The position numbers and the translations under genes were made by a program. A stretch of 64,000 nucleotides of DNA, taken from positions 124,001 through 188,000 of IMG/VR virus record IMGVR_UViG_3300023184_000024. One strand, 5' to 3'. Below the pieces are notes generated by a model. It ran no database searches. It saw only the letters and a program-made list of their open reading frames with translations, and was not told the origin of the DNA. Positions 1 to 13,360 of the stretch are shown here, one piece after another. Position 1 is the first letter of the stretch. The number at the start of each line of letters is the position of its first letter.

Positions 1-15
1 TTTAAGGAGAAGTGT

Positions 16-210
16 ATGAAGCACAAGATGATCGTGCCACAACGTAACCCCTTCGTTGTGTTGGCACTAAAACGCAAAGCGGGTAGTCATCGCAAGAGCA
101 ACAAAGCTCTGCGTCGATGCGAAAAATCTAGGGATCGTGGTGAAGCGGTATCACAGCAGACTTTTAATCTGCCAATCCCGAGTTCGAATCTCGGCGGTCC
201 CACCATATAA
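16..210 (+). CDS. small basic protein whose reading frame runs through tRNA-Lys
   Basis: AAGGAG at 4-9, 6 nt before ATG; Lys/Arg-rich first 38 codons; no stop until 208-210, after the tRNA CCA. Confidence 0.55.
   Translation: MKHKMIVPQRNPFVVLALKRKAGSHRKSNKALRRCEKSRDRGEAVSQQTFNLPIPSSNLGGPTI
131..205 (+). tRNA. tRNA-Lys(TTT)
   Basis: cloverleaf, GCAGA-CT TTT AA-TCTGC, TTCGAAT loop, CCA. Confidence 0.95.
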
Positions 211-271
211 AAACACATTGGTGTTGGTTTAACAAATAAGTAAACCTAGTTATAGTGTGTTTCTATATGGT
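202..271 (+). repeat. inverted-repeat stem, copy 1 of AAACACAYT/AGTGTGTTT element
   Basis: ACCATATA-A-AAACACATT pairs with AGTGTGTTT-C-TATATGGT. Confidence 0.7.
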
Positions 272-277
272 AGAGTT

Positions 278-367
278 GGAACGGTCCCATAATGGTATTG
301 GAGCGGATTGCTAATCCGTCGAGTGGTGAAAGCCGCTTTCTGGGTTCAAGTCCCAGTCGTTCCGCCA
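278..367 (+). tRNA. tRNA-Ser(GCT)
   Basis: cloverleaf with long variable arm, anticodon GCT, G73, CCA. Confidence 0.95.
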
Positions 368-374
368 ACATTTT

Positions 375-450
<76 letters not shown>

Positions 451-457
451 AACATAT

Positions 458-533
<76 letters not shown>

Positions 534-541
534 ATTTCTTA

Positions 542-633
542 ACCTCGGTAGTTTAACGGTAAAACAGCGGATTTATATCCCGTGCGCAACAGATAATTGG
601 CCAATGTGGGTTCAACTCCCGCCCGAGGTACCA
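542..633 (+). tRNA. tRNA-Ile(TAT) with atypical 22-nt variable arm
   Basis: ACCTCGG/CCGAGGT acceptor, loop TT TAT AT, T arm GTGGG-TTCAACT-CCCGC, A73, CCA. Confidence 0.85.
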
Positions 634-641
634 TCAAGTTT

Positions 642-715
642 GTATCCATAGTGTAATGGCAGCATCGCGGTCTCCAAAACCGTCAGTCTAGGTTCGAGTC
701 CTAGTGGGTACGCCA
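642..715 (+). tRNA. tRNA-Trp(CCA)
   Basis: GCGGT-CT CCA AA-ACCGT, G73, CCA. Confidence 0.95.
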
Positions 716-731
716 AATAAAGGAGCATAGT

Positions 732-1337
732 ATGCCAGCAGTATTTTTAGTCAGTGATACACACTTCGGACACGCTGGTGTGTGTCGCTTCATGCACCCC
801 GATGATCCTGAAGTAAAATTACGGCCGTGGACTGATCCCGATGAGATGGATGAGGAAATGGTGCGACGATGGAACGACCGTGTGCGACCCAACGACAAGG
901 TCTACCATTTGGGCGATGTTGTCATCAACCGTAAGGCCATGAAAACCTTGCATCGCTTGAATGGTGACAAGGTGTTGATACGCGGCAACCATGACATCTT
1001 CCGTGACGAGGAGTACAGAGAACACTTTCGTGAGTTGCGAGCATACCATGTCATGAACGGAATGATCTTGAGTCATATTCCTGTGCACGAAGCCAGCTTG
1101 GGCAGGTTTGGTACAAACATTCACGGACACTTGCACGCCAGTCGTGTAAAGAAAGTGCGTGGCTACGATGTCGAAACAGGTACCATGTTGTACAGCAACG
1201 AGATTGATCCACGCTACCATTGTGTCTGCGTAGAACAAACCGACTACACGCCCATCTTGTTTGAAGATGTGATCAAACGCATTGAAGCAGAAGGCGGTAG
1301 TGTGGGATTTAAAAACGGCAACGGACCAACTATGTAA
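732..1337 (+). CDS. calcineurin-like metallophosphoesterase
   Basis: SDTHFGH, HLGD, RGNHD, HGHLH motifs; AAGGAG RBS. Confidence 0.9.
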   Translation: MPAVFLVSDTHFGHAGVCRFMHPDDPEVKLRPWTDPDEMDEEMVRRWNDRVRPNDKVYHLGDVVINRKAMKTLHRLNGDKVLIRGNHDIFRDEEYREHFRELRAYHVMNGMILSHIPVHEASLGRFGTNIHGHLHASRVKKVRGYDVETGTMLYSNEIDPRYHCVCVEQTDYTPILFEDVIKRIEAEGGSVGFKNGNGPTM

Positions 1338-1342
1338 TACAT

Positions 1343-1417
1343 CGCGGGGTGGAGAAGTGGTAACTCATCGGGCTCATAACCCGAAGATCGACGGTTCGAA
1401 TCCGTCCCCCGCAACCA
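1343..1417 (+). tRNA. initiator tRNA-fMet(CAT)
   Basis: C1:A72 mismatch, GGG/CCC anticodon stem, CAT, CCA. Confidence 0.95.
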
Positions 1418-1418
1418 A

Positions 1419-1883
1419 TTACTGAGTAATTTGCCCTGTTACAGCATCCACATGCACAGGTTGGCGATCAGCAAATGTAAAATCATAAAAAGGATTGCCT
1501 CGATAATCAACAGTTTGGCGTAATCTACAGAACAACCAAACATTTGTGATACCTGCTTTGGTCATAGCCTGTTGTGCTTGAGCACAACTCAGTGTAGGTG
1601 GATATACAAATGCCTGACACTCAGCCACACGAGAGTCATCAAAAGTGGGACCAGTGGCATTGCCCGTAATGTCAACAGTTATAGCATAAGGCTTGGTATC
1701 TTCGGATCCTTGCCAGCAGGTATACATAGTGCCATTATGGTCAGCCTCAGCAAGATAAAATTTAGATCCGTTTTGATGTAGATCCATAAGGCTTTTGGCT
1801 CCCCAGATCTGTTGATCAAAACTCAAGGGAGACAACAACCTTAGTCGTCGTAAATACTGTTTTATACGTGTTATTATTGACAT
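1419..1883 (-). CDS. hypothetical protein
   Basis: 154-aa ORF with upstream AAAGGA and TAAATA on minus strand; C-terminal VHVDAVTGQI is PepSY-like. Confidence 0.65.
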   Translation of the reverse strand: MSIITRIKQYLRRLRLLSPLSFDQQIWGAKSLMDLHQNGSKFYLAEADHNGTMYTCWQGSEDTKPYAITVDITGNATGPTFDDSRVAECQAFVYPPTLSCAQAQQAMTKAGITNVWLFCRLRQTVDYRGNPFYDFTFADRQPVHVDAVTGQITQ

Positions 1884-1936
1884 AATTACATTTCCTTTTG
1901 TTGATAATACTTATTTAATTAATGTTAAACATCAAT

Positions 1937-2011
1937 GCCTGGTTAGTTCAGCGGTAGAACTCCGTCTTTACACGGCGGCTGTCGGCGGTTCGATCCCGTC
2001 ACCAGGTACCA
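1937..2011 (+). tRNA. tRNA-Val(TAC)
   Basis: CCGTC-TT TAC AC-GGCGG, CCA. Confidence 0.95.
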
Positions 2012-2068
2012 ATTTGACATTTAGCCTAATAGGTTGAATATTTTCAGTACTCAACTGTATAATTGTAT

Positions 2069-2797
2069 ATGTTGAAATATGTGTTATTAACTCTAGCAAT
2101 GATTGCCCCGGCCACAACTGTGGCTGATTGGGAATGGTCAAACAATTTAACTGCCAAAAGTTGGTTGGTTGCAGACGGCAACGGAGTAATACTCCAAAGC
2201 AATAACATCAATGAATCTAGAAGCATTGCCAGCATTACCAAGTTGATGACAGCAATGACTGTGATCGACGCTGGGCAGAACCCAAAAGAAATCATAGGGA
2301 AGTTTACCAGAGCACAGCATATACAGTTGGCTCTTGTTAGATCCAGCAATGAATCTGCTATTGCATTATGCGACAAATATCCTGGCGGGAAACCCAGTTG
2401 TATTAGAGACATGAATCAAAAAGCAATAGCAATGGGCATGCACAACACTAAGTTTGTTGAAGCGTCTGGCCTGAGTCCAATGAACATCAGTACTGCAACT
2501 GATTTATTAGAATTAGTTCTTTCGGCTAGTTATTACCCCGAAATTGTCAAAGCAAGTAAAACTCCACAAATAAAAATTCAAATCAGAAAGCAGTGGCTTT
2601 TCTTTGACAATACCAATCCAATCATCGGCAAACGCCATAATTTCATTGTGAGTAAAACTGGCATAACAAATGCCGCAGGCGGGTGTATTGTAATGATGCT
2701 AGACACCGAAGTCGGAAGGCGTGTTGTTGTTGTGCTCGGAAGCAAGAACGGCCAGACTAGGATACCCGAAGCTGAGTTTATTGCAACTCAGCACTGA
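2069..2797 (+). CDS. D-alanyl-D-alanine carboxypeptidase/endopeptidase (peptidase S11)
   Basis: signal peptide, SITK (SxxK), SSN (SxN), KTG motifs. Confidence 0.9.
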   Translation: MLKYVLLTLAMIAPATTVADWEWSNNLTAKSWLVADGNGVILQSNNINESRSIASITKLMTAMTVIDAGQNPKEIIGKFTRAQHIQLALVRSSNESAIALCDKYPGGKPSCIRDMNQKAIAMGMHNTKFVEASGLSPMNISTATDLLELVLSASYYPEIVKASKTPQIKIQIRKQWLFFDNTNPIIGKRHNFIVSKTGITNAAGGCIVMMLDTEVGRRVVVVLGSKNGQTRIPEAEFIATQH

Positions 2798-2827
2798 TTG
2801 TGTTGTATTTAAACAACACCTATGTGG

Positions 2828-2856
2828 TTGACCAGAAATGCTCATTTTGCTATAAT
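2828..2856 (+). promoter_or_regulatory. sigma70-type promoter P1 of RNA operon
   Basis: TTGACC-17-TATAAT with extended -10 TG. Confidence 0.85.
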
Positions 2857-2925
2857 AGAAACAAGTTAAGAAATTAACTGATGTTGCAAAAGACCCAGGA
2901 AGTTGTAGGGTTTTTGCAAAATGAA

Positions 2926-2954
2926 TTGACCGGTATATGCCATTGTGTTATACT
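2926..2954 (+). promoter_or_regulatory. sigma70-type promoter P2 of RNA operon
   Basis: TTGACC-17-TATACT with extended -10 TG. Confidence 0.8.
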
Positions 2955-2979
2955 AGAGACTAGTTAGAAATTAACTAGA

Positions 2980-2991
2980 TGTTCTTTAAAA
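2980..2991 (+). promoter_or_regulatory. boxA-like antitermination site
   Basis: TGTTCTTTAAAA, right after a hairpin downstream of P2; resembles rrn boxA TGCTCTTTAACA. Confidence 0.7.
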
Positions 2992-3029
2992 AATTATTTT
3001 TCGTATAGTAGTCTCGGACTAGTTCCGGG

Positions 3030-3274
3030 CACTATATGTAAACGCATCGGGTTACCAACCCAGTAGGCAACTTGGCAAGAGACTAATCTGTGGCCGCACA
3101 GACTCTTCCAAGTTACATGAAAGATGGAAACGAAGCCGCAAGGTGGATACTGTACAATCGCGCTGGAACTAGTTGGTCTGTAATGTGTTTGGCAAACAAG
3201 TCCGTGGACGGCACGGTAGGGCAGGTTTAAAACTGCGATCGTTGTCAAACATCCCTATGTGTTTTCATATAGTG
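3030..3274 (+). ncRNA. unidentified structured RNA, about 245 nt (contains copy 2 of the stem element)
   Basis: closing stem CACTATATG-T-AAACGCAT / ATGTGTTT-T-CATATAGTG, with several internal hairpins and GNRA loops. Confidence 0.7.
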
Positions 3275-3280
3275 AATTTT

Positions 3281-3416
3281 TAATGTTGTTAGTTCTGCCT
3301 TCTGTAAGCCCTGGGGGAAACGTCAACCCTGAGTAACTATGTGTATAAACGGTACGTCCGGCCGGCAATTCCGTTGAGCATAGCAAATAGTATAGTTGGC
3401 AGAACTAACAATATTA
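3281..3416 (+). ncRNA. unidentified structured RNA, about 136 nt
   Basis: 19-bp terminal stem 3281-3299/3398-3416, inner CTATG/CATAG and AACGG/CCGTT helices. Confidence 0.6.
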
Positions 3417-3492
3417 GGTCTTAAAGTGTTCATGGACGCACGACGGCTTGTCACGCCGTAAGAGTGGGGATCGTTACCCCCTAAGACCGCCA
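3417..3492 (+). tRNA. tRNA-Asp(GTC)
   Basis: ACGGC-TT GTC AC-GCCGT, G73, CCA; atypical T loop ATCGTTA. Confidence 0.9.
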
Positions 3493-3497
3493 AGTTT

Positions 3498-3569
3498 TGT
3501 GGTAAGGAAAGTAAAAGGAGAATGGGCAAGTTGTTGGCTAGTCAACAACCAGATACCTCACCTGCCACA
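3498..3569 (+). ncRNA. small hairpin RNA candidate
   Basis: TGTGGTA/TGCCACA closing stem, GTTGTTGGC/GTCAACAAC apical stem. Confidence 0.4.
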
Positions 3570-3580
3570 TTTTAATTTTT

Positions 3581-3644
3581 GAGAGCCACATCGCCTGGAT
3601 ACCTCCTCCTCTTAGGAGCACTGGGTCCTGCAACCGTGGCTCTC
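3581..3644 (+). ncRNA. small hairpin RNA candidate with anti-SD-like motif
   Basis: GAGAGCCAC/GTGGCTCTC stem, CTCCT/AGGAG apical stem. Confidence 0.5.
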
Positions 3645-3652
3645 CCTTATTT

Positions 3653-3727
3653 GCTCGATTCGTCTATCGGTTAGGACATGCGGTTTTCATCCGCATAAGA
3701 GCGGTTCGACTCCGCTATCGAGTACCA
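3653..3727 (+). tRNA. tRNA-Glu(TTC)
   Basis: TGCGG-TT TTC AT-CCGCA, CCA. Confidence 0.95.
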
Positions 3728-3732
3728 TACAT

Positions 3733-3817
3733 GGAGATGCCGCCGCAATGGTGTGGCAGGGGACTGTAAATCCTCCGACTTCGGTCACGATAGGTTCGAT
3801 CCCTATCATCTCCACCA
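3733..3817 (+). tRNA. tRNA-Tyr(GTA)
   Basis: GGGGA-CT GTA AA-TCCTC, long variable arm, CCA. Confidence 0.95.
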
Positions 3818-4010
3818 GAACGTTCCGAGTGTCTTCGGATACTGTGACCCGCAGGATGAGAAGTAGTGTGACAACTACGGGTGGTAGTCTTCGAACCTAA
3901 AGGCCGCTGGCAATGCGAGAACTGTCCCTGTCGGGAAGCGGGTGGAAGGTACGTGTGAGGGGTATGATAGCGTCATATCTTTCTGTACTATAATTACCGC
4001 CGGGGGATGC
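3818..4010 (+). ncRNA. unidentified structured, probably pseudoknotted RNA, about 190 nt
   Basis: UUCG-capped hairpin, GTAGT/ACTAC hairpin, 3880-3888/3993-4001 stem, crossing ACCCGC/GCGGGT pairing. Confidence 0.65.
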
Positions 4011-4011
4011 A

Positions 4012-4084
4012 GAGCATATTGAAGCACATTGTGTGTCGGCTTGCTGATAAACTTTAAGTAGAGATAGTGTGTTTCAATATGCTT
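4012..4084 (+). repeat. inverted-repeat stem, copy 3 of AAACACAYT/AGTGTGTTT element
   Basis: GAGCATATTGAAGCACATT pairs with AGTGTGTTTCAATATGCTT. Confidence 0.7.
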
Positions 4085-4089
4085 TTTAT

Positions 4090-4167
4090 GCACAGGTGGC
4101 AGAGTGGTCCAATGCAACGGATTGCAAATCCGTAAAACCGTGAGTTCAAATCTCACCCTGTGTTCCA
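4090..4167 (+). tRNA. tRNA-Cys(GCA)
   Basis: ACGGA-TT GCA AA-TCCGT, U73, CCA. Confidence 0.95.
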
Positions 4168-4175
4168 ATAAGGTT

Positions 4176-4251
4176 GCCTCCATAGCTCAGTTGGTAGAGC
4201 ACTGTGTTGATAACGCAGTGGTCCCTGGTTCGAGTCCAGGTGGCGGCACCA
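4176..4251 (+). tRNA. tRNA-Ile(GAT)
   Basis: CTGTG-TT GAT AA-CGCAG, CCA. Confidence 0.95.
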
Positions 4252-4266
4252 TGTAAGATATAAATT

Positions 4267-4340
4267 GCGGGGTTCGTATAGTGGTAATACCTCAGCCTTC
4301 CAAGCTGATGCGGAGAGTTCGATTCTCTTACCCCGCTCCA
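4267..4340 (+). tRNA. tRNA-Gly(TCC)
   Basis: TCAGC-CT TCC AA-GCTGA, U73, CCA. Confidence 0.95.
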
Positions 4341-4345
4341 TACAC

Positions 4346-4541
4346 CCGGTTACACTTTGACGTCTAAAGTGGGTGGGGCAGTCACCATAGAAAGTGCTGG
4401 GTTTGTAGTGCAACGACCATCCGTACTCTGTCGTGGAGTGGCGGGAACGCATTAGGGGGAGAACACAACTTAAACCCAAAGCGAAAAATGTGTGGACAGA
4501 GTAACAGCTCGGTCCGGGGCCTATGTGGTGTAGGTAGCCGG
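4346..4541 (+). ncRNA. unidentified multi-branched RNA, about 196 nt
   Basis: CCGGTTAC/GTAGCCGG closing stem; CACTTT/AAAGTG, GGTG/CACC, TGGGTTT/AAACCCA, TAGTGC/GCATTA, GGAC/GTCC helices. Confidence 0.7.
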
Positions 4542-4554
4542 ACACTTATAAAAT

Positions 4555-4630
4555 GCGGGATTAGCTCAGTTGGTAGAGCGATACCTTGCCAAGGTATAGG
4601 TCGAGAGTTCGAGCCTCTTATCCCGCTCCA
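4555..4630 (+). tRNA. tRNA-Gly(GCC)
   Basis: ATACC-TT GCC AA-GGTAT, CCA. Confidence 0.95.
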
Positions 4631-5424
4631 TCAAATTCTAAATACTCAAATTCCAATGTTGGTTGTTGTACTGCAATCAGTAGATCGTCAGTGTTGACGA
4701 CTCGCCCCACAACCGGGTGTCCGGTGAATTGTTTTATTTTTTCAATTCCGTGTGTGGCAACAAACTCTGGTGCATGAGTATTGAACCAGTTGATGTAACT
4801 GTTCCAATCAAAATAATTGTCAGTGCCTGTGTTAGTATTGATTACTAGATTAATGCCGGGCTTGACTTGATCATGGAAGCGGCAAGTTTGCATGACGTTG
4901 GTGTCGTCTTGTTGTTCATACAGATACAACGGATGATGCCCTACATGCGGATTTTGCAAACGTATATCACCAAATTCAAGATTGATCTTGGCAGGGTATT
5001 CCAGTGGATCTATTGCAAACATTGTATCGTTGAACCATTCAATCTGCAACCAACTATTACGAAGGCTTCCGCTTTCAAGTGCGTGTAGTGCAAAATGTAG
5101 TTCGTGTAATATGTCATCATGTTCTGCAGGTATGTTTTCAAATCCATTGGCAAGATAAGCTTCAATGTCCTTGTGTAATTTTGTGGTCACTGCAACATTG
5201 TAAGAGTCACGTTGCCAATCCCAACCCAATTCTTGTTTGGCACGATGCACAAGTTTTTCAAAATATTGTATGGTGTATTTTTGAGGATCACGAAAAATAG
5301 CGTGTGGGTCAACGGTCCATTGTTGTTTAATCAAAGATAGATATTTCTTTGCCAAATTTGTATCGTTTAACTTGCAATACAAGGGCGGAATGTTATAAAA
5401 TTTTACAACAAAATCATGAGTCAT
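4618..5424 (-). CDS. hypothetical protein
   Basis: 268-aa ORF, TAAATA just upstream; stop lies within tRNA-Gly 3' end. Confidence 0.75.
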   Translation of the reverse strand: MTHDFVVKFYNIPPLYCKLNDTNLAKKYLSLIKQQWTVDPHAIFRDPQKYTIQYFEKLVHRAKQELGWDWQRDSYNVAVTTKLHKDIEAYLANGFENIPAEHDDILHELHFALHALESGSLRNSWLQIEWFNDTMFAIDPLEYPAKINLEFGDIRLQNPHVGHHPLYLYEQQDDTNVMQTCRFHDQVKPGINLVINTNTGTDNYFDWNSYINWFNTHAPEFVATHGIEKIKQFTGHPVVGRVVNTDDLLIAVQQPTLEFEYLEFDGAG

Positions 5425-5460
5425 TGATTATTTACAAGTTATTTTTGAACCGTTAGTTTT

Positions 5461-5535
5461 CTGGCCATAGTATAATGGATAATACAGCGGCCTTCTAAGC
5501 CGTCAATCTAGGTTCGATTCCTAGTGGCCGGACCA
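5461..5535 (+). tRNA. tRNA-Arg(TCT)
   Basis: GCGGC-CT TCT AA-GCCGT, CCA. Confidence 0.95.
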
Positions 5536-5545
5536 ATTAACCCGT

Positions 5546-5621
5546 GGGGGTGTAGCTCAGTTGGGAGAGCGTTTGCTTTGCAAGCAAAATGTCGCAGGTT
5601 CGATCCCTGTCACCTCCACCA
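5546..5621 (+). tRNA. tRNA-Ala(TGC)
   Basis: G3:U70, TTTGC-TT TGC AA-GCAAA, CCA. Confidence 0.95.
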
Positions 5622-5668
5622 TTTAATAATATTGTCACATTTAAAATGATATATACAGGTATACAACC

Positions 5669-6103
5669 ATGCTACATTTAATCAAAAGCGTCACTGACTC
5701 CTTAATGGACTTTCTCAGTCAAGATCCTGTGCGTCCGCACATTCCCAGATCTGTTAGAGTTGGCAATAATCGAGACATTTTTGTGGCTCGCAAAGACGAT
5801 CAAAGCGTCAAAGCAATAACCTGTGTTAGTTATCAAAACATAATCCCCACTTCCGAAGGTGAATTGTTTGAACTCACCGAGTCTCCAGATGTTGTGGTAT
5901 TTTACACTATCTGGAGTTACGAGCCAGGTGCAGGTCGCGAGTTAATTTTTGAAGCCCGGGATTGGATTCAAAAAAATCGACCCGAAATTAAAAGATTTGT
6001 TACTCTAAGCCCTCCCACAGAAATGGCTCGTCGGTTTCACATCAAGAATGGTGCATTAGTACATCGCATCAATCCCGAAACTGTTAACTACGAGTATCAG
6101 TGA
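5669..6103 (+). CDS. hypothetical protein, GNAT-like fold
   Basis: VFYTIWS..GAGRELI, FVTLSP, ARRFHIKNGA motifs. Confidence 0.6.
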   Translation: MLHLIKSVTDSLMDFLSQDPVRPHIPRSVRVGNNRDIFVARKDDQSVKAITCVSYQNIIPTSEGELFELTESPDVVVFYTIWSYEPGAGRELIFEARDWIQKNRPEIKRFVTLSPPTEMARRFHIKNGALVHRINPETVNYEYQ

Positions 6104-6451: not shown

Positions 6452-8011
6452 ATGTTTGATAATACTAAACCCAATATTGTAATCTTAACCGACCATACCG
6501 ACCCTTTACTGATGCTCAAGCTGTTTGGTGCCAGTAAAGTTGCCGCAGAATTGCGCATGGCCGGTTTTCAAGTGGCAGTGATTAATCACCTACATCTATT
6601 TACAGTAGAAGAAATTAAAAACATACTAGTACAACTAGTCAGTGATCAAACTGTGTTTGTTGGCACTAGTCCGTTTTTCTATAAAAATATCGAGAATGTG
6701 TTGACTGATCATGAATTTGATCACGAGCAAGGCGGTAAAAAATATGGAACCAAAGAATTAGGCAGTTTTTTGCCACACGGAATCAAGTACAATCAAGAAA
6801 TCAAGCACTTGATCAAAGGAATTAACCCCAACTGTAAGTTTGTCATTGGCGGCCCCGACGCACAAGATCGACAGTACAACAAAGACTACGATTATGTCAT
6901 TGTTGGCTACGGAGACAACAGTGGTCCCAATTTGGCCAGACATTTGGCCTACGGCGAACCTTTGGAAAAATCGCATCGTAGTTTGTACGGACCAGTCATT
7001 GTCGACGATAGATTGGCATCTAATTATAACTTTAATTCGTCGCTGATGAGCTACGAAGATCATGATGCTCTGCTGCCTGGAGAGACCATGCTGACCGAAA
7101 TTGCACGTGGTTGTATTTTCCGCTGTGGCTTTTGCAGTTACCCTCTGAATGGTAAGAAGAAATTAGATCATATTAAATTAGATGACATTCTCTATCAAGA
7201 ATTCATGGACAACTACGAAAAGTACGGTATAACAAGATACATGTTCAGTGATGATACCTACAACGACAGTGTAGATAAAATTAAGATGATGCATGCAGTC
7301 AGTAAACGTTTGCCATTTCAACTTGAATACTGGGCTTGCTTGCGTTTAGATTTACTAGGAGCACACCCCGAAACAATCGATTTGCTGTATGAAAGCGGTC
7401 TTCGTGCCATGATGTTTGGCATCGAAACACTGCATGAAAAAGCCAGTAAGATTATTGGCAAGGGCGGCAGTCGAGCCAAGCAAATTGCCACCATCAATTA
7501 CATCAAAGAAAAGTACGGCAACAATGTAATGATGCACGGGTCCTTTATATTTGGACTTCCTGAAGAGCCAATAGAGTCTATGTTGGACACAGCTGATCGA
7601 TTGGTGTCAGGAGAAATCAAACTTGACTCCTGGGCCATTCATGCATTTAGATTACAACACAAAGGTATGAGTTATACCAGCGAGTTTGATTTGAATCCTG
7701 AAAAGTATGGATACGAACCATACGATAATACATTAGGCGGCAATCGCCTAATTTGGAAAAACAAGTTTACCAACTTTTACGAGTGCGAGAAACTGGCACA
7801 AGAAACACTCAAGCGCGGCGCCATTAAACTAAAACTTAACAAAATTGCCGGTGTAACCAGTATGTTTATTGCAGGGCTGGGTTTTGATTTACAGTACTCG
7901 GCTAATAAAAACGTTGTAGACTTTGACTGGCATCAAATTGATTTGGCCAAACAACGACGCAGTGCAGAATACAAAGAATTGTTGTACAAACAACTCAACA
8001 TTCAACCATAA
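6452..8011 (+). CDS. B12-binding-type radical SAM protein
   Basis: ARGCIFRCGFC (CxxxCxxC), VIGGP, FSDDT, FGIET, FIFGLP motifs. Confidence 0.85.
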   Translation: MFDNTKPNIVILTDHTDPLLMLKLFGASKVAAELRMAGFQVAVINHLHLFTVEEIKNILVQLVSDQTVFVGTSPFFYKNIENVLTDHEFDHEQGGKKYGTKELGSFLPHGIKYNQEIKHLIKGINPNCKFVIGGPDAQDRQYNKDYDYVIVGYGDNSGPNLARHLAYGEPLEKSHRSLYGPVIVDDRLASNYNFNSSLMSYEDHDALLPGETMLTEIARGCIFRCGFCSYPLNGKKKLDHIKLDDILYQEFMDNYEKYGITRYMFSDDTYNDSVDKIKMMHAVSKRLPFQLEYWACLRLDLLGAHPETIDLLYESGLRAMMFGIETLHEKASKIIGKGGSRAKQIATINYIKEKYGNNVMMHGSFIFGLPEEPIESMLDTADRLVSGEIKLDSWAIHAFRLQHKGMSYTSEFDLNPEKYGYEPYDNTLGGNRLIWKNKFTNFYECEKLAQETLKRGAIKLKLNKIAGVTSMFIAGLGFDLQYSANKNVVDFDWHQIDLAKQRRSAEYKELLYKQLNIQP

Positions 8012-8014
8012 TCG

Positions 8015-8043
8015 TTGACTGCTGACTCAACATCTGTTATAAT
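8015..8043 (+). promoter_or_regulatory. sigma70-type promoter
   Basis: TTGACT-17-TATAAT with TG extension, upstream of tRNA-Leu. Confidence 0.85.
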
Positions 8044-8303: not shown

Positions 8304-8307
8304 TATT

Positions 8308-8457
8308 ATGAAACTGTTCGAAGCAACAATAAAAATTAACGGTCGAGAATTCAAAGATCGTGTGGGCGCAAATAATGCCGAAGAAGCACGATTGCTTTTA
8401 CAACAACGTCATGGGCCTAGGGCAGTGCCTTATTTGCCCAAAATGATACCAAGTTAA
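8308..8457 (+). CDS. small hypothetical protein (49 aa)
   Basis: MKLFEATIKING... exactly fills the gap between two tRNAs. Confidence 0.6.
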   Translation: MKLFEATIKINGREFKDRVGANNAEEARLLLQQRHGPRAVPYLPKMIPS

Positions 8458-8459
8458 CA

Positions 8460-9032: not shown

Positions 9033-9764
9033 ATGTACATGCATTATGTACAGGAAATTAACCCTTGCCCCAGTGACTGGGCAACACAGTTTAAGTTAAC
9101 TGATTTCTATCAGCACATAGCCAAAGATTATAATCACGTAATCAGTAGTCACAAAGAAATGACTGTGTTAAAGGCAGCATTGCACCACACAGTGTACGAA
9201 ACTGGTCGCAGGTTTTGTGACCAATACGGCATACTCGATGCCACTCCGTACTATTACATTTTATCTTTGCTAGATATCAATCCAGAAAAAATTGTTGACC
9301 TAGGCTGTGGAGACAATGTTTTTTCCAAAACAATTCCTGGACTTGTTGGCATTGATGCTGATCCAAAAAGCAAGTGCGACATTCATGATTTTTTTGATCA
9401 AGATTTTGTCACGGGCCATAAAGAATTCTGTGATGCATTGATCACTATCAACACCATACATTTTTCATCGCTGGATACTATCACCCAAAGACTAAACTGG
9501 TGCCAACAGTTATTAAAACCCGGTGGGCGTGCTTTTGTTTCATTTAACATAGAAACTTGGTTAATGCACACAACAACACAACGATGTCAAGAATTATTTG
9601 GGCCTTGGCCCAGAGTTGAAGATGTAATTGCTTTTGTTGATCGGGCCGTCACCGATGCTGATTTAAAATTGTTGATCTATGATTTTCCTATATCACGGGT
9701 GTCTGCGGTGTCGAGCATACGTGACGACTACAATGGGAACATAAGATTGGTATTCCAAAAATGA
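9033..9764 (+). CDS. class I SAM-dependent methyltransferase
   Basis: IVDLGCG, GID, LLKPGG motifs. Confidence 0.8.
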   Translation: MYMHYVQEINPCPSDWATQFKLTDFYQHIAKDYNHVISSHKEMTVLKAALHHTVYETGRRFCDQYGILDATPYYYILSLLDINPEKIVDLGCGDNVFSKTIPGLVGIDADPKSKCDIHDFFDQDFVTGHKEFCDALITINTIHFSSLDTITQRLNWCQQLLKPGGRAFVSFNIETWLMHTTTQRCQELFGPWPRVEDVIAFVDRAVTDADLKLLIYDFPISRVSAVSSIRDDYNGNIRLVFQK

Positions 9765-12117: not shown

Positions 12118-12756
12118 TTGCCGGTACATTTAATCAATCCACTGCCGATATATCAAGAAGAGTCTGGCTATACTTTGTCAGACTCTGAATTATCGATACT
12201 CAACAATATCAAATATAACTCAGTGAGCAAGCCGTTTATCTGGGAATATGCATCAGAGTATACAATATTAGATCACCCTGGACTGGCAGATCTAAAGGCT
12301 GTATTACAACAGCACTTGGATAGGTATCGCAAAGAAATATGTGGTGTGGTTGATCAAGAGTTTTATATTACCAACAGTTGGTTAAGTAAAATCGAAGCTA
12401 TCCAAGGTAACTTATCTGAACATTCGCACGACAACAGTTTAATCAGTGGTGTGTTTTACATTGATGTCCCGCCCGACACTCCTTTGTGTTTTCGTAATCA
12501 TAGTCAGATTTTTAAAAAACATGATTTTTATTTTTCAAACAGTGTTGATACACAATACCGACAAGAAACATATTGTGTACCAGTAAAATCTGGAGACATT
12601 GTGCTATTCCCAAGTTGGGTAGATCATTACGTTGAAAAAAATCAAACAAGTCATGTTCGAAGAAGTTTGGCATTTGATAGTTTTGTTCGAGGGCTGTTTG
12701 ATGGTAAAATGTTGCACAACGATAAAACTGGTTTTAGTACGCTAATGATTAAATAA
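12118..12756 (+). CDS. putative 2OG-Fe(II) oxygenase (TIGR02466-like)
   Basis: HSH.NS.ISGVFY, GDIVLFPSWVDHYV, RRSLAF motifs. Confidence 0.8.
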   Translation: MPVHLINPLPIYQEESGYTLSDSELSILNNIKYNSVSKPFIWEYASEYTILDHPGLADLKAVLQQHLDRYRKEICGVVDQEFYITNSWLSKIEAIQGNLSEHSHDNSLISGVFYIDVPPDTPLCFRNHSQIFKKHDFYFSNSVDTQYRQETYCVPVKSGDIVLFPSWVDHYVEKNQTSHVRRSLAFDSFVRGLFDGKMLHNDKTGFSTLMIK

Positions 12757-12760
12757 AAGT

Positions 12761-13083
12761 TAAGACTGTATGAAGTAGAGAGAAAAGGATTCAAGACGCG
12801 GGGGCAGTGCCCGCCAGGTCCACCAAAAACACACTGCCAGTCGCGCTGGTTGTATGGTACTATTCTAGAAATAAGGTTCGAATCCTTAGTGTGTTTTTGA
12901 TGGGCCTGACACAGGATCGATTGGGTCAAGAGTATTGAAATGGACAGTCCGGCAATGTAGAAGCCGTTAGGGTTGGGGGAACTCGGCCGAAGACACAAAA
13001 ACCGTAAATGCAAACGACGAACAGTTCGCTTTAGCCGCCTAAACTCGGCTTAGGGTAGGAAATACCTCGTAACAGAAACCACC
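12761..13083 (+). ncRNA. ssrA: two-piece (circularly permuted) tmRNA
   Basis: acceptor piece ends ...GCGGG-GGCAGTG-CCCGC-CAGGTCC-ACCA (12825) before the coding piece starting GGGCCTG (12902); G3:U70; tag ANDEQFALAA* at 13010-13042; 5' end approximate. Confidence 0.92.
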
Positions 13084-13107
13084 AGCCCGCTTCGGCGGGC
13101 TTTTTTT
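13084..13107 (+). terminator. intrinsic terminator
   Basis: AGCCCGC-TTCG-GCGGGCT followed by a T run. Confidence 0.9.
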
Positions 13108-13120
13108 CTTGGAGTAAACT

Positions 13121-13360
13121 ATGGGCAATCAAACCGATTATTTTGAACGCATTGGCTACAAACCCACCTGGTATCTAGGAGATAGGGTGTTTGGGCATTG
13201 GAATAAAATTCCTTTTGTTGGAACAGTGGGCAATGATACTGTGATTAATCATACTGAAGGGCCACGGATCACTATTCATTTAGACCTTCCCATCAAGTAC
13301 AAGAGTCAAATACACAATATTATTGTAGTTAATCATAAAGATATCAAGCTTTACAAGTAA
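13121..13360 (+). CDS. hypothetical protein
   Basis: GGAG RBS, 79-aa ORF. Confidence 0.7.
   Translation: MGNQTDYFERIGYKPTWYLGDRVFGHWNKIPFVGTVGNDTVINHTEGPRITIHLDLPIKYKSQIHNIIVVNHKDIKLYK

What the first reader, a model, noticed from the sequence alone, without database searches (positions are those of the whole stretch)
3030..4541. Array of unannotated structured RNAs co-transcribed with phage tRNAs
Directly after the rrn-like leader, the gaps between tRNAs are not AT-rich spacers. They are self-contained folded modules with complementary ends: 3030-3274, 3281-3416, 3498-3569, 3581-3644, 3818-4010 and 4346-4541. None has a credible ORF. The pairings are seen directly. That they are processed, abundant phage ncRNAs forming an undescribed RNA system is inference. 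Large phage ncRNAs lying beside tRNAs have precedent (GOLLD, manA), but I cannot match these to any family.
Basis: partly seen in the sequence, partly recalled or inferred. Interest (0 to 1): 0.85.

Follow-up and report, generated by a model that had tools for sequence, protein, structure and literature searches.

The report
New structured RNAs among phage tRNAs
A lake-water jumbo phage carries, inside one tRNA operon, at least five folded RNA genes that match no Rfam family; related phages keep them through compensating base changes and two are abundant in lake RNA samples, but their job is unknown.

Summary
The window lies in a 352,754-bp IMG/VR phage genome with terminal repeats. Window 2828-4735 is one operon. 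It starts with two tandem sigma-70 promoters and a boxA-like element, holds seven tRNAs, and ends at a terminator-like hairpin.

The six tRNA-free segments (M1-M6) are all non-coding and single-copy. All are conserved in related uncultivated phages:
- M1: 43 loci
- M2: 15
- M3: 5
- M4: 33
- M5: 122 (its invariant 21-mer hits at least 119 contigs)
- M6: 56

Five families (M1, M2, M4, M5, M6) show strong compensatory covariation. M3 rests on four sequences. Every copy lies on the tRNA strand, usually 2-13 nt from a tRNA, and the neighbouring tRNAs differ between phages.

In four metatranscriptomes M5 reaches depth 204-3187 and M1 about 600 in one run, while neighbouring protein genes read 0.

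No Rfam family matches. RNase P, permuted tmRNA, Y RNA and reverse-transcriptase-linked RNAs were tested and not met; T4 rnaC/rnaD share no sequence similarity.

Best reading: new classes of stable phage small RNAs, transcribed with tRNAs and probably released by tRNA-processing nucleases. Their function is unknown.

The parts
2828..2856 (+). Promoter P1: TTGACC, 17-nt spacer, (TG)TATAAT
   Evidence: 11 of 12 consensus matches with an extended -10. Conserved in 12 related leaders.
2926..2954 (+). Promoter P2: TTGACC, 17-nt spacer, (TG)TATACT
   Evidence: 10 of 12 matches. The -35 and -10 elements are near-invariant in 12 leaders.
2980..2992 (+). boxA-like element TGTTCTTTAAAAA in the leader
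   Evidence: Invariant in 10 of 12 aligned leaders. It matches 11 of 13 bases of E. coli rrn boxA TGCTCTTTAACAA; that sequence is from my own knowledge, not from a tool.
3030..3274 (+). M1, an RNA of about 245 nt: closing stem of about 17 bp plus long-range helices (CCAAC/GUUGG, CCAG/CUGG)
   Evidence: z -4.5. 43 loci. 21 of 33 pairs show double-sided changes and 95.6% of cells pair, against 34-45% when the partner is slid. Metatranscriptome depth about 600 in X17.
3281..3416 (+). M2, a 136-nt RNA: 19-bp perfect closing stem and a three-way junction
   Evidence: z -5.9. 15 loci. 10 of 37 pairs show double-sided changes and 98% of cells pair, against 32-50% slid.
3417..3492 (+). tRNA-Asp(GTC), atypical
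   Evidence: ARAGORN calls it. The Rfam tRNA model gives no hit.
3498..3569 (+). M3, a conserved segment of about 72 nt: purine-rich 5' half plus a hairpin. This is the weakest module.
   Evidence: z -0.4. 5 loci at 86-96% identity. 3-4 covarying pairs from 4 distinct sequences.
3581..3644 (+). M4, a 64-nt rod-like hairpin with invariant internal loops (AUCGCCUGGAUAC / CUAGGUCCUGCAACC)
   Evidence: z -3.3. 33 loci. 13 of 21 pairs show double-sided changes and 96.9% of cells pair, against 33-45% slid.
3653..3817 (+). tRNA-Glu and tRNA-Tyr
3818..4016 (+). M5, an RNA of about 199 nt.
- Hairpins: H1 3824-3839, H2 3842-3854, H3 3864-3877, H4 3887-3904, H5 3905-3917.
- Long arm H6: 3924-3953 pairs with 3984-4008.
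- Proposed pseudoknots: 3847-3850 with 3879-3882, and 3883-3885 with 3895-3897.
   Evidence: 122 loci. The invariant 21-mer occurs in at least 119 viral contigs. 98.8% of cells pair, 27 of 48 pairs show double-sided changes, and 0 of 500 shuffles reach this. Highest metatranscriptome depth of the 6-kb stretch.
4012..4088 (+). Long hairpin (21-bp stem) followed by a U-run. It could be an RNase III site or a leaky terminator.
   Evidence: z -6.1. The stem arms are conserved in 9 loci.
4090..4340 (+). tRNA-Cys, tRNA-Ile and tRNA-Gly(TCC)
4347..4545 (+). M6, an RNA of about 200 nt. It has a 5' hairpin and pseudoknot domain, a variable centre, a conserved AUGGACAGAGUAAC.GCUCAG segment, and a 3' hairpin with a GG/UAG internal loop.
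   Evidence: 56 matches in 52 loci, in three subtypes. 18, 14 and 10 pairs show double-sided changes within the subtypes, and 95-99% of cells pair, against 36-50% slid.
4555..4630 (+). tRNA-Gly(GCC), the last gene of the operon
4712..4735 (+). Terminator-like hairpin plus T-run at the end of the operon

Best explanation
Window 2828-4735 is one transcription unit. It is built like a ribosomal RNA operon leader (two strong tandem promoters, then a boxA-like element) and encodes seven tRNAs interleaved with six non-tRNA RNA genes from unrelated families.

Each family behaves like a tRNA gene. It is a single-copy cassette on the tRNA strand, a few bases from its neighbours, and it sits beside different tRNAs in different phages.

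The proposed mechanism is as follows.
1. The RNAs are made as part of the tRNA precursor.
2. The nucleases that trim the flanking tRNAs set them free. RNase P cutting at the 5' end of the downstream tRNA would define their 3' side. RNase E, RNase Z or exonucleases working behind the upstream tRNA would define their 5' side. RNase III would act on the long perfect stems of M2 and of the 4012-4084 hairpin.
3. Their compact, pseudoknotted folds let them persist as abundant stable RNAs that act in trans during infection. The most plausible target is the translation or tRNA machinery that this phage re-equips with 29 tRNAs and a tmRNA.

Shown: conservation, covariation, strand and spacing, the conserved leader, RNA-library abundance of M5 and M1, and absence from Rfam.
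Inferred: co-transcription, which nucleases cut, discrete mature ends, trans action, and the target.
For: - Genome context: a 352,754-bp phage with terminal repeats. All 29 tRNAs and the tmRNA lie in one 17-kb region.
- Leader: promoters and a boxA-like element conserved in 12 loci. The scan finds no + strand terminator-like site between 2954 and 4712.
- Families: 43, 15, 5, 33, 122 and 56 loci. Each is single-copy in the genome.
- Strand: 100% on the same strand as flanking tRNAs, for example M5 102/102 upstream and 104/104 downstream.
- Spacing: the median gap to the downstream tRNA is 8-13 nt for M1, M2, M4, M5 and M6. The median gap to the upstream tRNA is 2.5-10 nt for M2-M5.
- Neighbours vary. 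For M5: Tyr, Arg, Ser, Asp, Asn upstream and Leu, Ile, Cys, Ala, Thr downstream.
- Covariation: M5 has 27 of 48 pairs with double-sided change, 98.8% of cells paired against 37-49% slid, and 0 of 500 shuffles reaching this. For M1, M2, M4 and M6.
- Expression: in four RNA libraries M5 bins read 204/317/3187/1216 and M1 bins read 604/529 in X17. Coding bins 2401-2800 and 4801-5200 read 0 in all four runs, and the flanking bins at most 2.6. A 225-nt RNA contig spans tRNA-Glu, tRNA-Tyr and the start of M5.
- Precedent: T4 RNAC and RNAD lie in the T4 tRNA cluster and are still of unknown function (PMC9697503). GOLLD and ROOL are phage RNAs often found near tRNA islands (PMC12286853).
Against: - No 5' or 3' ends were mapped. 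The RNA evidence comes from assembled contigs without strand information, mostly from relatives at 88-99% identity, so depth is only a rough measure.
- M2, M3 and M4 have little RNA support (depths 2-83).
- A hairpin plus U-run at 4012-4088 sits in the middle of the proposed operon.
- No partner protein or target was identified.
- A purely cis role in precursor folding or processing is not excluded.
- M3 rests on four distinct sequences.
Confidence: 0.62

Rival explanations
1. The modules are cis-acting parts of the tRNA precursor. They would be structured spacers that insulate neighbouring tRNAs from misfolding, provide RNase III or RNase E entry sites, or modulate termination and antitermination. 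They would have no function once cut out.
For: - They sit tightly between tRNAs.
- The M2 closing stem and the 4012-4084 hairpin are long perfect duplexes, which suit RNase III.
- The operon has an rrn-like leader, and in rRNA operons the flanking stems are processing sites (the rRNA comparison is from my own knowledge).
- In relatives a leader hairpin overlaps the 5' strand of M1's closing stem.
Against: - Most tRNA pairs in the same genome need only 0-15 nt of spacer.
- The families keep invariant loops and pseudoknots, for example a 21-mer in at least 119 contigs, while their neighbouring tRNAs change.
- M5 and M1 accumulate to or above tRNA level in RNA libraries, which is unusual for discarded spacers.
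Confidence: 0.15
2. M5 (possibly also M4 or M6) is a tRNA-directed RNA: a ribozyme or tRNA-binding scaffold that docks tRNA the way RNase P or T-box leaders do.
For: - M5 has an invariant internal loop GUGGAA / AUAAUUA. Its UGGAA fits the UG..A half of the double T-loop module that binds the tRNA elbow (PMC3664808).
- The strand GGGUGGU pairs with two loops that carry ACC.
- Conservation is at a level typical of catalytic or ligand-binding cores.
- M5 is always embedded among tRNAs.
- Theta ribozymes set a precedent for catalytic RNAs attached to phage tRNAs (PMC10879173).
Against: - The second half of the module (AG..A) is absent; the opposite strand reads AAUUA.
- No RNase P, T-box or HDV model scores, even at E<=10.
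- The 5'-terminal GAACGUU has no downstream partner for an HDV-like P1 (read from the sequence).
- No biochemical test was possible.
Confidence: 0.1
3. The RNAs are decoys or sponges against host defence or host RNA metabolism. They could be dsRNA or tRNA-like baits for host nucleases, or aptamers that sequester a signalling molecule.
For: They are highly expressed, compact and phage-only. They sit in tRNA arrays, and I recall (own knowledge, not a tool result) that phage tRNA arrays are thought to counter tRNA-targeting defences. They contain long perfect duplexes.
Against: No similarity to any known decoy. No repeats like ToxI or CRISPR repeats; the only CRISPR-repeat hit is E 5.4 in the leader. 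No linked anti-defence gene was identified.
Confidence: 0.08
4. They are highly diverged or fragmented copies of housekeeping RNAs: RNase P RNA split into pieces, tmRNA pieces, SRP RNA, 6S RNA or 5S RNA.
For: - From memory, M5 resembles the RNase P segments GGGUGAAAGG and UAAACUCCACC.
- M6 subtype A reads AUAGAAAGUGCUGGG, which resembles the 5' strand of P4.
- There is a recurrent weak RF04321 hit over M5.
- The phage does carry a permuted tmRNA.
Against: - RF00010 finds nothing in the whole phage genome at E<=10, although it rings in 11 control genomes (over its cut-off in 8) and finds rnpB in 4 of 4 bacterial genomes.
- The P4-like string is not conserved in M6 subtypes B and C.
- The tmRNA hit is the T-arm and acceptor strand of upstream tRNA-Tyr plus GGGGAUG of M5. 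That GGGGAUG instead covaries with GUCCCU inside M5.
- nhmmer profiles of M1-M6 give no significant hit to four real RNase P genes (best E 0.64).
Confidence: 0.03
5. The segments encode small proteins, or they are chance structure in spacers.
For: Short ORFs exist on both strands. 19 of 52 M5 members are stop-free in some frame.
Against: One- and two-base indels occur inside the conserved M5 core. Substitutions are compensatory in helices. The minus-strand ORFs overlap tRNA genes. The mini-ORF in M3 varies from 8 to 17 codons with an AGGAG-AUG spacing of 1 nt (read from the sequence).
Confidence: 0.02

Closest known systems
Phage T4 stable RNAs species 1 and 2 (rnaC, rnaD)
   Same: They are non-tRNA small RNAs of 139 and 119 nt. 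They are encoded inside the phage tRNA cluster, on the tRNA strand, 1-6 nt from their neighbours. They were detected by Northern blot and their function is still unknown (PMC9697503).
   Different: There is no sequence similarity (nhmmer). By my reading of the sequence, T4 rnaC ends in a tRNA-like T-arm, which M1-M6 lack. Here there are six RNAs from unrelated families, two of them pseudoknotted, behind an rrn-like leader.
GOLLD and ROOL RNAs
   Same: They are phage or prophage structured RNAs of unknown function, often found next to tRNA islands, with complex pseudoknotted folds and high abundance (PMC12286853).
   Different: GOLLD and ROOL are single RNAs of roughly 500-800 nt or more (800+ for GOLLD per PMC12286853; the ROOL size is from my own knowledge) that form homo-oligomeric cages. 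Here the RNAs are 64-245 nt, separated by tRNAs, and have no Rfam hit to either family at E<=10.
Theta (minimal HDV-like) ribozymes attached to phage tRNAs
   Same: They are structured RNAs immediately adjacent to phage tRNAs, proposed to process the tRNA 3' trailer (PMC10879173). M3, M5 and M6 start 0-6 nt after a tRNA.
   Different: No HDV-family model scores. M5 lacks a downstream partner for its 5' end. The HDV-like P2 I tried on M6 is contradicted by covariation of the 3' hairpin. The theta ribozymes are reported from gut phages of Bacteroidota and Bacillota.
tRNA-elbow-binding double T-loop module (RNase P J11/12-J12/11, T-box Stem I apex, L1 stalk)
   Same: The invariant internal loop of M5 contains UGGAA (UG..A) next to a variable hairpin, as in the RNase P S-domain.
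   Different: The partner T-loop AG..A is missing. No covariance model supports homology. This is a lead recalled from memory plus PMC3664808, not a match.
Bacterial rRNA operon leaders (tandem P1/P2 promoters plus boxA antitermination)
   Same: There are two tandem near-consensus promoters followed by TGTTCTTTAAAAA, an 11-of-13 match to E. coli rrn boxA (sequence from my own knowledge). The arrangement is conserved across 12 phage loci.
   Different: It drives tRNAs and small RNAs, not rRNA. Nus-factor dependence is untested.
UG27 reverse-transcriptase ncRNA arrays in phages
   Same: They are arrays of structured ncRNA units in phage genomes with modular gain and loss (10.64898/2026.09.22.753630).
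   Different: UG27 units are paralogous repeats next to a reverse transcriptase. This genome has no RVT_1 match and its units belong to unrelated families.

Membership tests
Any Rfam 15 family | A covariance-model match at the gathering score, or at least E<=10 | tested here: not met
   Only tRNA and tmRNA pass in the window. At E<=10 on 2780-4700 nothing covers M1-M6 except a 23-bit tmRNA_permuted artefact. The result is the same in six related loci.
Bacterial RNase P RNA (type A) | Match to RF00010, which models the sequence and nested helices of the RNase P core | tested here: not met
   0 matches at E<=10 in the whole 352,754-bp genome, while the same search rings in 11 control genomes, over the cut-off in 8. 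It finds rnpB in 4 of 4 bacterial genomes.
Bacterial RNase P RNA (type A) | Conserved GAGGAAAGUCC-type 5' strand of P4, present across the family | tested here: not met
   An AUAGAAAGUGCUGGG look-alike exists only in M6 subtype A. Subtypes B and C read AGAACAGGGGG and AGAGAUCCGG.
Bacterial RNase P RNA (type A) | Double T-loop module (AG..A plus UG..A) in the specificity domain | tested here: inconclusive
   M5 has UGGAA, but the opposite strand is AUAAUUA with no AG..A (PMC3664808).
Permuted (two-piece) tmRNA | The acceptor 3' strand pairs with the 5' end of the coding piece; a tag reading frame and pseudoknots are present | tested here: not met
   The 20-23-bit hit uses the T-arm and acceptor strand of tRNA-Tyr plus GGGGAUG of M5, with a 145-nt unaligned insert. 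GGGGAU covaries with GUCCCU inside M5. The upstream tRNA varies or is absent. The true tmRNA is at 12708-13133.
T4 rnaC / rnaD | Sequence or profile similarity | tested here: not met
   nhmmer profiles of M1-M6 run with --max against the T4 tRNA region give nothing better than E 0.68.
T4 rnaC / rnaD | Non-tRNA stable RNA encoded within the phage tRNA cluster, on the same strand, abutting tRNAs | tested here: met
   This is a shared genomic habit, not homology.
Bacterial Y RNA (YrlA type) | Linked Ro60 (TROVE) gene; tRNA-like domain | tested here: not met
   No TROVE and no RtcB match in the genome. No Rfam match of any kind over the modules at E<=10. A tRNA-like domain was not examined separately.
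Retron msr-msd / UG27 ncRNA arrays | Adjacent reverse transcriptase | tested here: not met
   No RVT_1 match in the whole genome.
HDV-like / theta ribozymes | Nested double pseudoknot whose 5'-terminal P1 strand pairs downstream; a catalytic C in J4/2 | tested here: inconclusive
   No HDV-family model hit. By inspection M5 and M3 have no P1 partner. An HDV-like threading of M6 fails on covariation. No descriptor search and no cleavage assay were run.
T-box leader | Match to RF00230; located upstream of an aminoacyl-tRNA-related gene; terminator/antiterminator switch | tested here: not met
   No hit at E<=10. M5 is flanked by tRNAs, not ORFs.
GOLLD / ROOL | Match to the Rfam models; a single large RNA (ROOL several hundred nt, GOLLD often over 800 nt) | tested here: not met
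   No hit at E<=10. The units are 64-245 nt and separated by tRNAs.

The most novel reading that the evidence does not exclude
M5 is a new class of large functional RNA that works directly on tRNAs. It would be either a phage-made ribozyme or a tRNA-docking scaffold. Its invariant internal loop would contact the tRNA elbow, and the GGGUGGU strand with its two ACC-bearing loops would contact the acceptor end. The other modules would be further components or independent effectors of a phage-encoded RNA toolkit for taking over translation.
Probability: 0.1. Interest if true: 0.92.

Novelty: new variant of a known kind. Interest (0 to 1): 0.7.

Why it matters
Phage RNAs that sit in tRNA clusters have been known since T4 species 1 and 2. 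GOLLD and ROOL showed that they can be spectacular. None of them yet has a function.

This locus adds five well-supported new RNA classes at once, in one operon. One of them, M5, has two proposed pseudoknots, is present in well over a hundred uncultivated freshwater phage contigs, and is among the most abundant signals from this region in lake metatranscriptomes.

The families give defined sequences, covariation-supported folds and boundaries. These can go straight into biochemical tests: self-cleavage, tRNA or ribosome binding, nuclease processing, and cryo-EM. The rrn-like leader also suggests that these phages drive a small translation-related RNA operon through host rRNA-type transcription control.

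Tried and rejected
- **RNase P, whole or split between M5 and M6.** The lead came from remembered sequence resemblances. RF00010 finds nothing in the genome. The P4-like string is subtype-specific. nhmmer finds no link to four real rnpB genes.
- **Permuted tmRNA-like reading of M5.** The recurrent weak RF04321 hit turns out to be upstream tRNA-Tyr plus a 7-nt coincidence.
- **Y RNA.** No Ro60 or RtcB gene.
- **Retron or UG27-type templates.** No reverse transcriptase.
- **HDV-like or theta ribozyme threading.** Tried on M3, M5 and M6 by hand; no supported P1 or P2.
- **Double T-loop and T-box resemblance of M5.** Only half of the motif is present (PMC3664808), and no covariance-model support.
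- **Homology to T4 rnaC/rnaD.** A shared GAACGUUC is just an 8-nt palindrome.
- **Bacterial origin.** A 17-mer scan of 185,579 species genomes returned 120 rows, about the number I estimate by chance. None is M5 by nhmmer.
- **Cultured phages.** No blastn match for M5 or for M1+M2 in 50,697 GenBank phage records.
- **Pairing of the M5 5' end with the J5/6 GAACG.** No covariation, and the pairing is broken in L140, L147, L151 and L106.
- **Gap 8304-8459 as a seventh RNA.** It is a conserved ORF of about 49 codons.
- **Catalogue of candidate structured RNAs from IMG/VR (PMC10690425).** Its supplements are not held, so an anonymous prior listing cannot be excluded. The M5 core sequence occurs in no held paper.
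Full report
**What the window is**

The window is bases 124001-188000 of a 352,754-bp IMG/VR virus record with direct terminal repeats, so it is a complete jumbo phage genome. ARAGORN finds 27 tRNAs and a tmRNA in the first 13 kb of the window. The genome holds 29 tRNAs and one tmRNA in all, on one strand, within 17 kb. Most neighbouring tRNAs are 0-15 nt apart. The finding concerns the exceptions: about 390 nt ahead of tRNA-Asp, 160 nt between tRNA-Asp and tRNA-Glu, 272 nt between tRNA-Tyr and tRNA-Cys, and 214 nt between the two tRNA-Gly genes.

**Checking the observation**

I call the six segments M1 to M6. Their single-sequence folding energies against dinucleotide shuffles are:
- M1 (3030-3274): z -4.5.
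- M2 (3281-3416): z -5.9, with a 19-bp perfect closing stem.
- M3 (3498-3569): z -0.4, not significant.
- M4 (3581-3644): z -3.3.
- 3818-4089, which holds M5 (3818-4016) and the following hairpin: z -3.2.
- 4341-4554, which holds M6 (4347-4545): z -0.5, not significant.
- A separate hairpin at 4012-4084 followed by UUUUUAU: z -6.1.

The ORFs in the region are short, or they lie on the minus strand across tRNA genes. Family alignments show one- and two-base indels inside the conserved M5 core and stops in most members of M1 and M6. M2 and M4 are short enough to be stop-free in some frame in several or all members, so for them the case against coding rests on covariation.

**Related sequences**

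GenBank phages share only the tRNAs with this region. Using the neighbouring DD-carboxypeptidase gene (2063-2797) I fetched 80 related IMG/VR loci. Only a few of them carried recognisable modules. The best conserved was M5, present in L086, L084 and L025 between different tRNAs.

Within all fetched viral loci, iterative nhmmer finds M1 in 43 loci, M2 in 15, M3 in 5, M4 in 33, M5 in 122 and M6 in 52. A 17-mer scan of one genome per prokaryote species gave 120 rows, roughly the number I estimate by chance, and none is M5. On present evidence the families are phage-specific.

**Covariation**

For M5 I used 52 non-redundant sequences (alignment A2). RNAalifold predicts 42 pairs, and 25 of them show changes on both sides.

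I then tested a hand-refined structure that adds two pseudoknots. The loop ACCC of hairpin H2 pairs with GGGU, and the adjacent GGU pairs with ACC in the loop of H4. On this structure 98.8% of cells form standard pairs, against 37-49% when the partner is slid by 1-3 columns. 27 of 48 pairs show double-sided changes, and no shuffle in 500 reaches the observed values. The two pseudoknots and the central part of the long arm H6 are almost invariant, so they are compatible with the data but barely tested.

The other families give the following:

| Family | Sequences | Pairs with double-sided change | Cells paired | Cells paired, slid control |
|---|---|---|---|---|
| M1 | 23 | 21 of 33 | 95.6% | 34-45% |
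| M2 | 8 | 10 of 37 | 98% | 32-50% |
| M4 | 17 | 13 of 21 | 96.9% | 33-45% |
| M6 subtype A | 9 | 18 of 54 | 95.0% | 37-50% |
| M6 subtype B | 6 | 14 of 48 | 97.9% | 36-44% |
| M6 subtype C | 8 | 10 of 45 | 98.9% | 36-45% |
| M3 | 4 | 3-4 of 22 | 100% | 27-60% |

These structures were derived from the same alignments, which favours the unslid register. The margin is large all the same.

M5 has no closing stem. The apparent end complementarity of M6 (CCGGUUAC / GUAGCCGG) is not used, because the 3' CCGG belongs to a local hairpin whose outer stem covaries.

**Genomic behaviour**

In every locus each module lies on the same strand as the flanking tRNAs; for M5 this is 102 of 102 upstream and 104 of 104 downstream. 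Median gaps are 2.5-10 nt after the upstream tRNA (M2-M5) and 8-13 nt before the downstream one (M1, M2, M4-M6).

The neighbouring tRNAs differ between phages. M5 follows Tyr, Arg, Ser, Asp, Asn, Glu or Cys, and precedes Leu, Ile, Cys, Ala, Thr, Asp or Tyr. Each family is single-copy in this genome. The modules therefore behave like independent genes that are shuffled along with the tRNA genes.

**The operon**

Upstream of M1 lie two near-consensus promoters with extended -10 elements (2828-2856 and 2926-2954). Each is followed by a related AGAAACAAGTTAAGAAATTAAC-type element. After the second comes TGTTCTTTAAAAA (2980-2992).

All of these are conserved in 12 related leaders, several of which are preceded by a terminator hairpin. 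The last element matches E. coli rrn boxA (TGCTCTTTAACAA, from my own knowledge) at 11 of 13 positions.

The simple scan finds no + strand terminator-like site until 4712-4725, just after the last tRNA-Gly. The 4012-4088 hairpin plus U-run is a possible internal attenuator or RNase III site. Nus-dependent antitermination is inference.

**Expression**

Lake and freshwater DNA runs hold the region, and six RNA runs hold 10-18% of its sampled words. I laid the contigs of four metatranscriptomes on window 1-6000. They give word depths of 204, 317, 3187 and 1216 in the M5 bin (3801-4000) and 604/529 in the M1 bins in run X17. The bins that hold mostly tRNA genes read between about 3 and 1100.

Coding bins 2401-2800 and 4801-5200 read 0 in all four runs, and the neighbouring bins 2201-2400 and 5201-5400 read at most 2.6. 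The silent protein genes argue against DNA carry-over. One 225-nt RNA contig spans tRNA-Glu, tRNA-Tyr and the first 67 nt of M5.

There are several limits on this evidence:
- The data are assembled contigs, so they carry no strand and no true ends.
- Most contigs come from relatives at 88-99% identity.
- Depth is only a rough proxy for abundance.
- M2, M3 and M4 have little support.

**Comparison with known families**

- **Rfam 15.** It finds nothing in M1-M6 at gathering score or at E<=10, in the window or in six related loci.
- **RNase P.** I pursued this seriously because parts of M5 and M6 recalled RNase P strings. RF00010 finds nothing in the phage genome, although it rings in 11 control genomes (over its cut-off in 8) and finds rnpB in four of four bacterial genomes. 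The P4-like string is confined to one M6 subtype. Profiles of M1-M6 do not hit real rnpB genes.
- **Permuted tmRNA.** The recurrent 20-23-bit hit is an artefact of tRNA-Tyr lying upstream.
- **Y RNAs, retron RNAs and UG27 arrays.** Their partner genes are absent: no TROVE, RtcB or RVT_1 match.
- **T4 rnaC/rnaD.** They share the genomic habit but no sequence.
- **Double T-loop module.** The invariant internal loop of M5 carries one half (UG..A) of the tRNA-elbow-binding module of RNase P, T-box leaders and the L1 stalk, but not the other half (AG..A) (PMC3664808). This remains a lead only.

**Most likely mechanism**

The RNAs are transcribed with the tRNAs from the rrn-like leader. The nucleases that mature the neighbouring tRNAs release them, and they persist as stable trans-acting RNAs. 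A role connected with translation or tRNA metabolism is the most economical guess, given the operon they share and the phage's investment in tRNAs and a tmRNA. The evidence does not show it.

The main rival is a cis role as processing or insulating spacers. The conservation of loops and pseudoknots across changing tRNA neighbours argues against it, as does the accumulation of M5 and M1. It is not excluded for M2, M3 or the 4012-4084 hairpin.

**Novelty**

The kind of thing is known: non-tRNA RNAs of unknown function embedded in phage tRNA clusters, such as T4 RNAC/RNAD (PMC9697503) and GOLLD/ROOL (PMC12286853). The families themselves match nothing in Rfam 15. The conserved M5 core sequence appears in no held paper, and no GenBank phage record matches M5 or M1+M2.

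A 2023 catalogue of more than 8,000 anonymous candidate structured RNAs from IMG/VR (PMC10690425) could contain some of them. Its supplements were not available.

Noticed in passing
window 3417-3492: ARAGORN calls tRNA-Asp(GTC) here, but the Rfam tRNA model gives no hit even at E<=10. By eye the T-loop reads AUCGUUA (positions 54 and 58 swapped) and there is a U49-C65 mismatch. It is 97.8% identical in L086. It is the commonest tRNA directly downstream of M1 (22/43) and M6 (22/55) and upstream of M4 (12/30).
   Followed up: partly
window 542-633: tRNA-Ile(TAT) is 92 nt long, the size of a long-arm tRNA. Related loci L086, L084 and L081 hold 82-95% identical sequence; ARAGORN was run on L086 and L084 and also calls a 92-nt tRNA-Ile(tat) there.
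   Followed up: no
window 12708-13133: The phage encodes a permuted (two-piece) tmRNA of the betaproteobacterial type with tag ANDEQFALAA. This hints at a betaproteobacterial lake host.
   Followed up: no
window 8308-8457: The 156-nt gap between tRNA-Thr and tRNA-Ser is not an RNA module. It is an ORF of about 49 codons, conserved at 72-75% nucleotide identity in 10 related loci.
   Followed up: partly
window 4012-4088: A 21-bp hairpin plus U-run lies directly after M5, and its 5' arm overlaps the M5 3' tail. The stem arms are conserved in 9 loci while the apex varies. It could be an RNase III site or a leaky terminator inside the operon.
   Followed up: partly
window 3001-3040; L103, L089, L111, L146 leaders: In several relatives a GCAA-tetraloop hairpin at the end of the leader overlaps the 5' strand of M1's closing stem. 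This suggests alternative pairings during transcription or processing.
   Followed up: no
L106, L107, L108, L175, L093 (M5 copies): Five M5 members carry an insertion of 37-70 nt between the GGGUGGU strand and hairpin H4, so that site appears tolerant to insertions.
   Followed up: no
window 8015-8043: A second near-consensus promoter (TTGACT, 17-nt spacer, TATAAT) lies just ahead of tRNA-Leu 8055, so the tRNA region holds several strong transcription units.
   Followed up: no
window 732-1337, 6452-8011, 9033-9764, 12118-12756: Genes interspersed with the tRNAs encode a metallophosphoesterase, a radical-SAM protein with a weak, sub-threshold B12-binding-domain match, a weak methyltransferase-like match and a 2OG-Fe(II) oxygenase. 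They are possible RNA- or tRNA-modifying enzymes.
   Followed up: no
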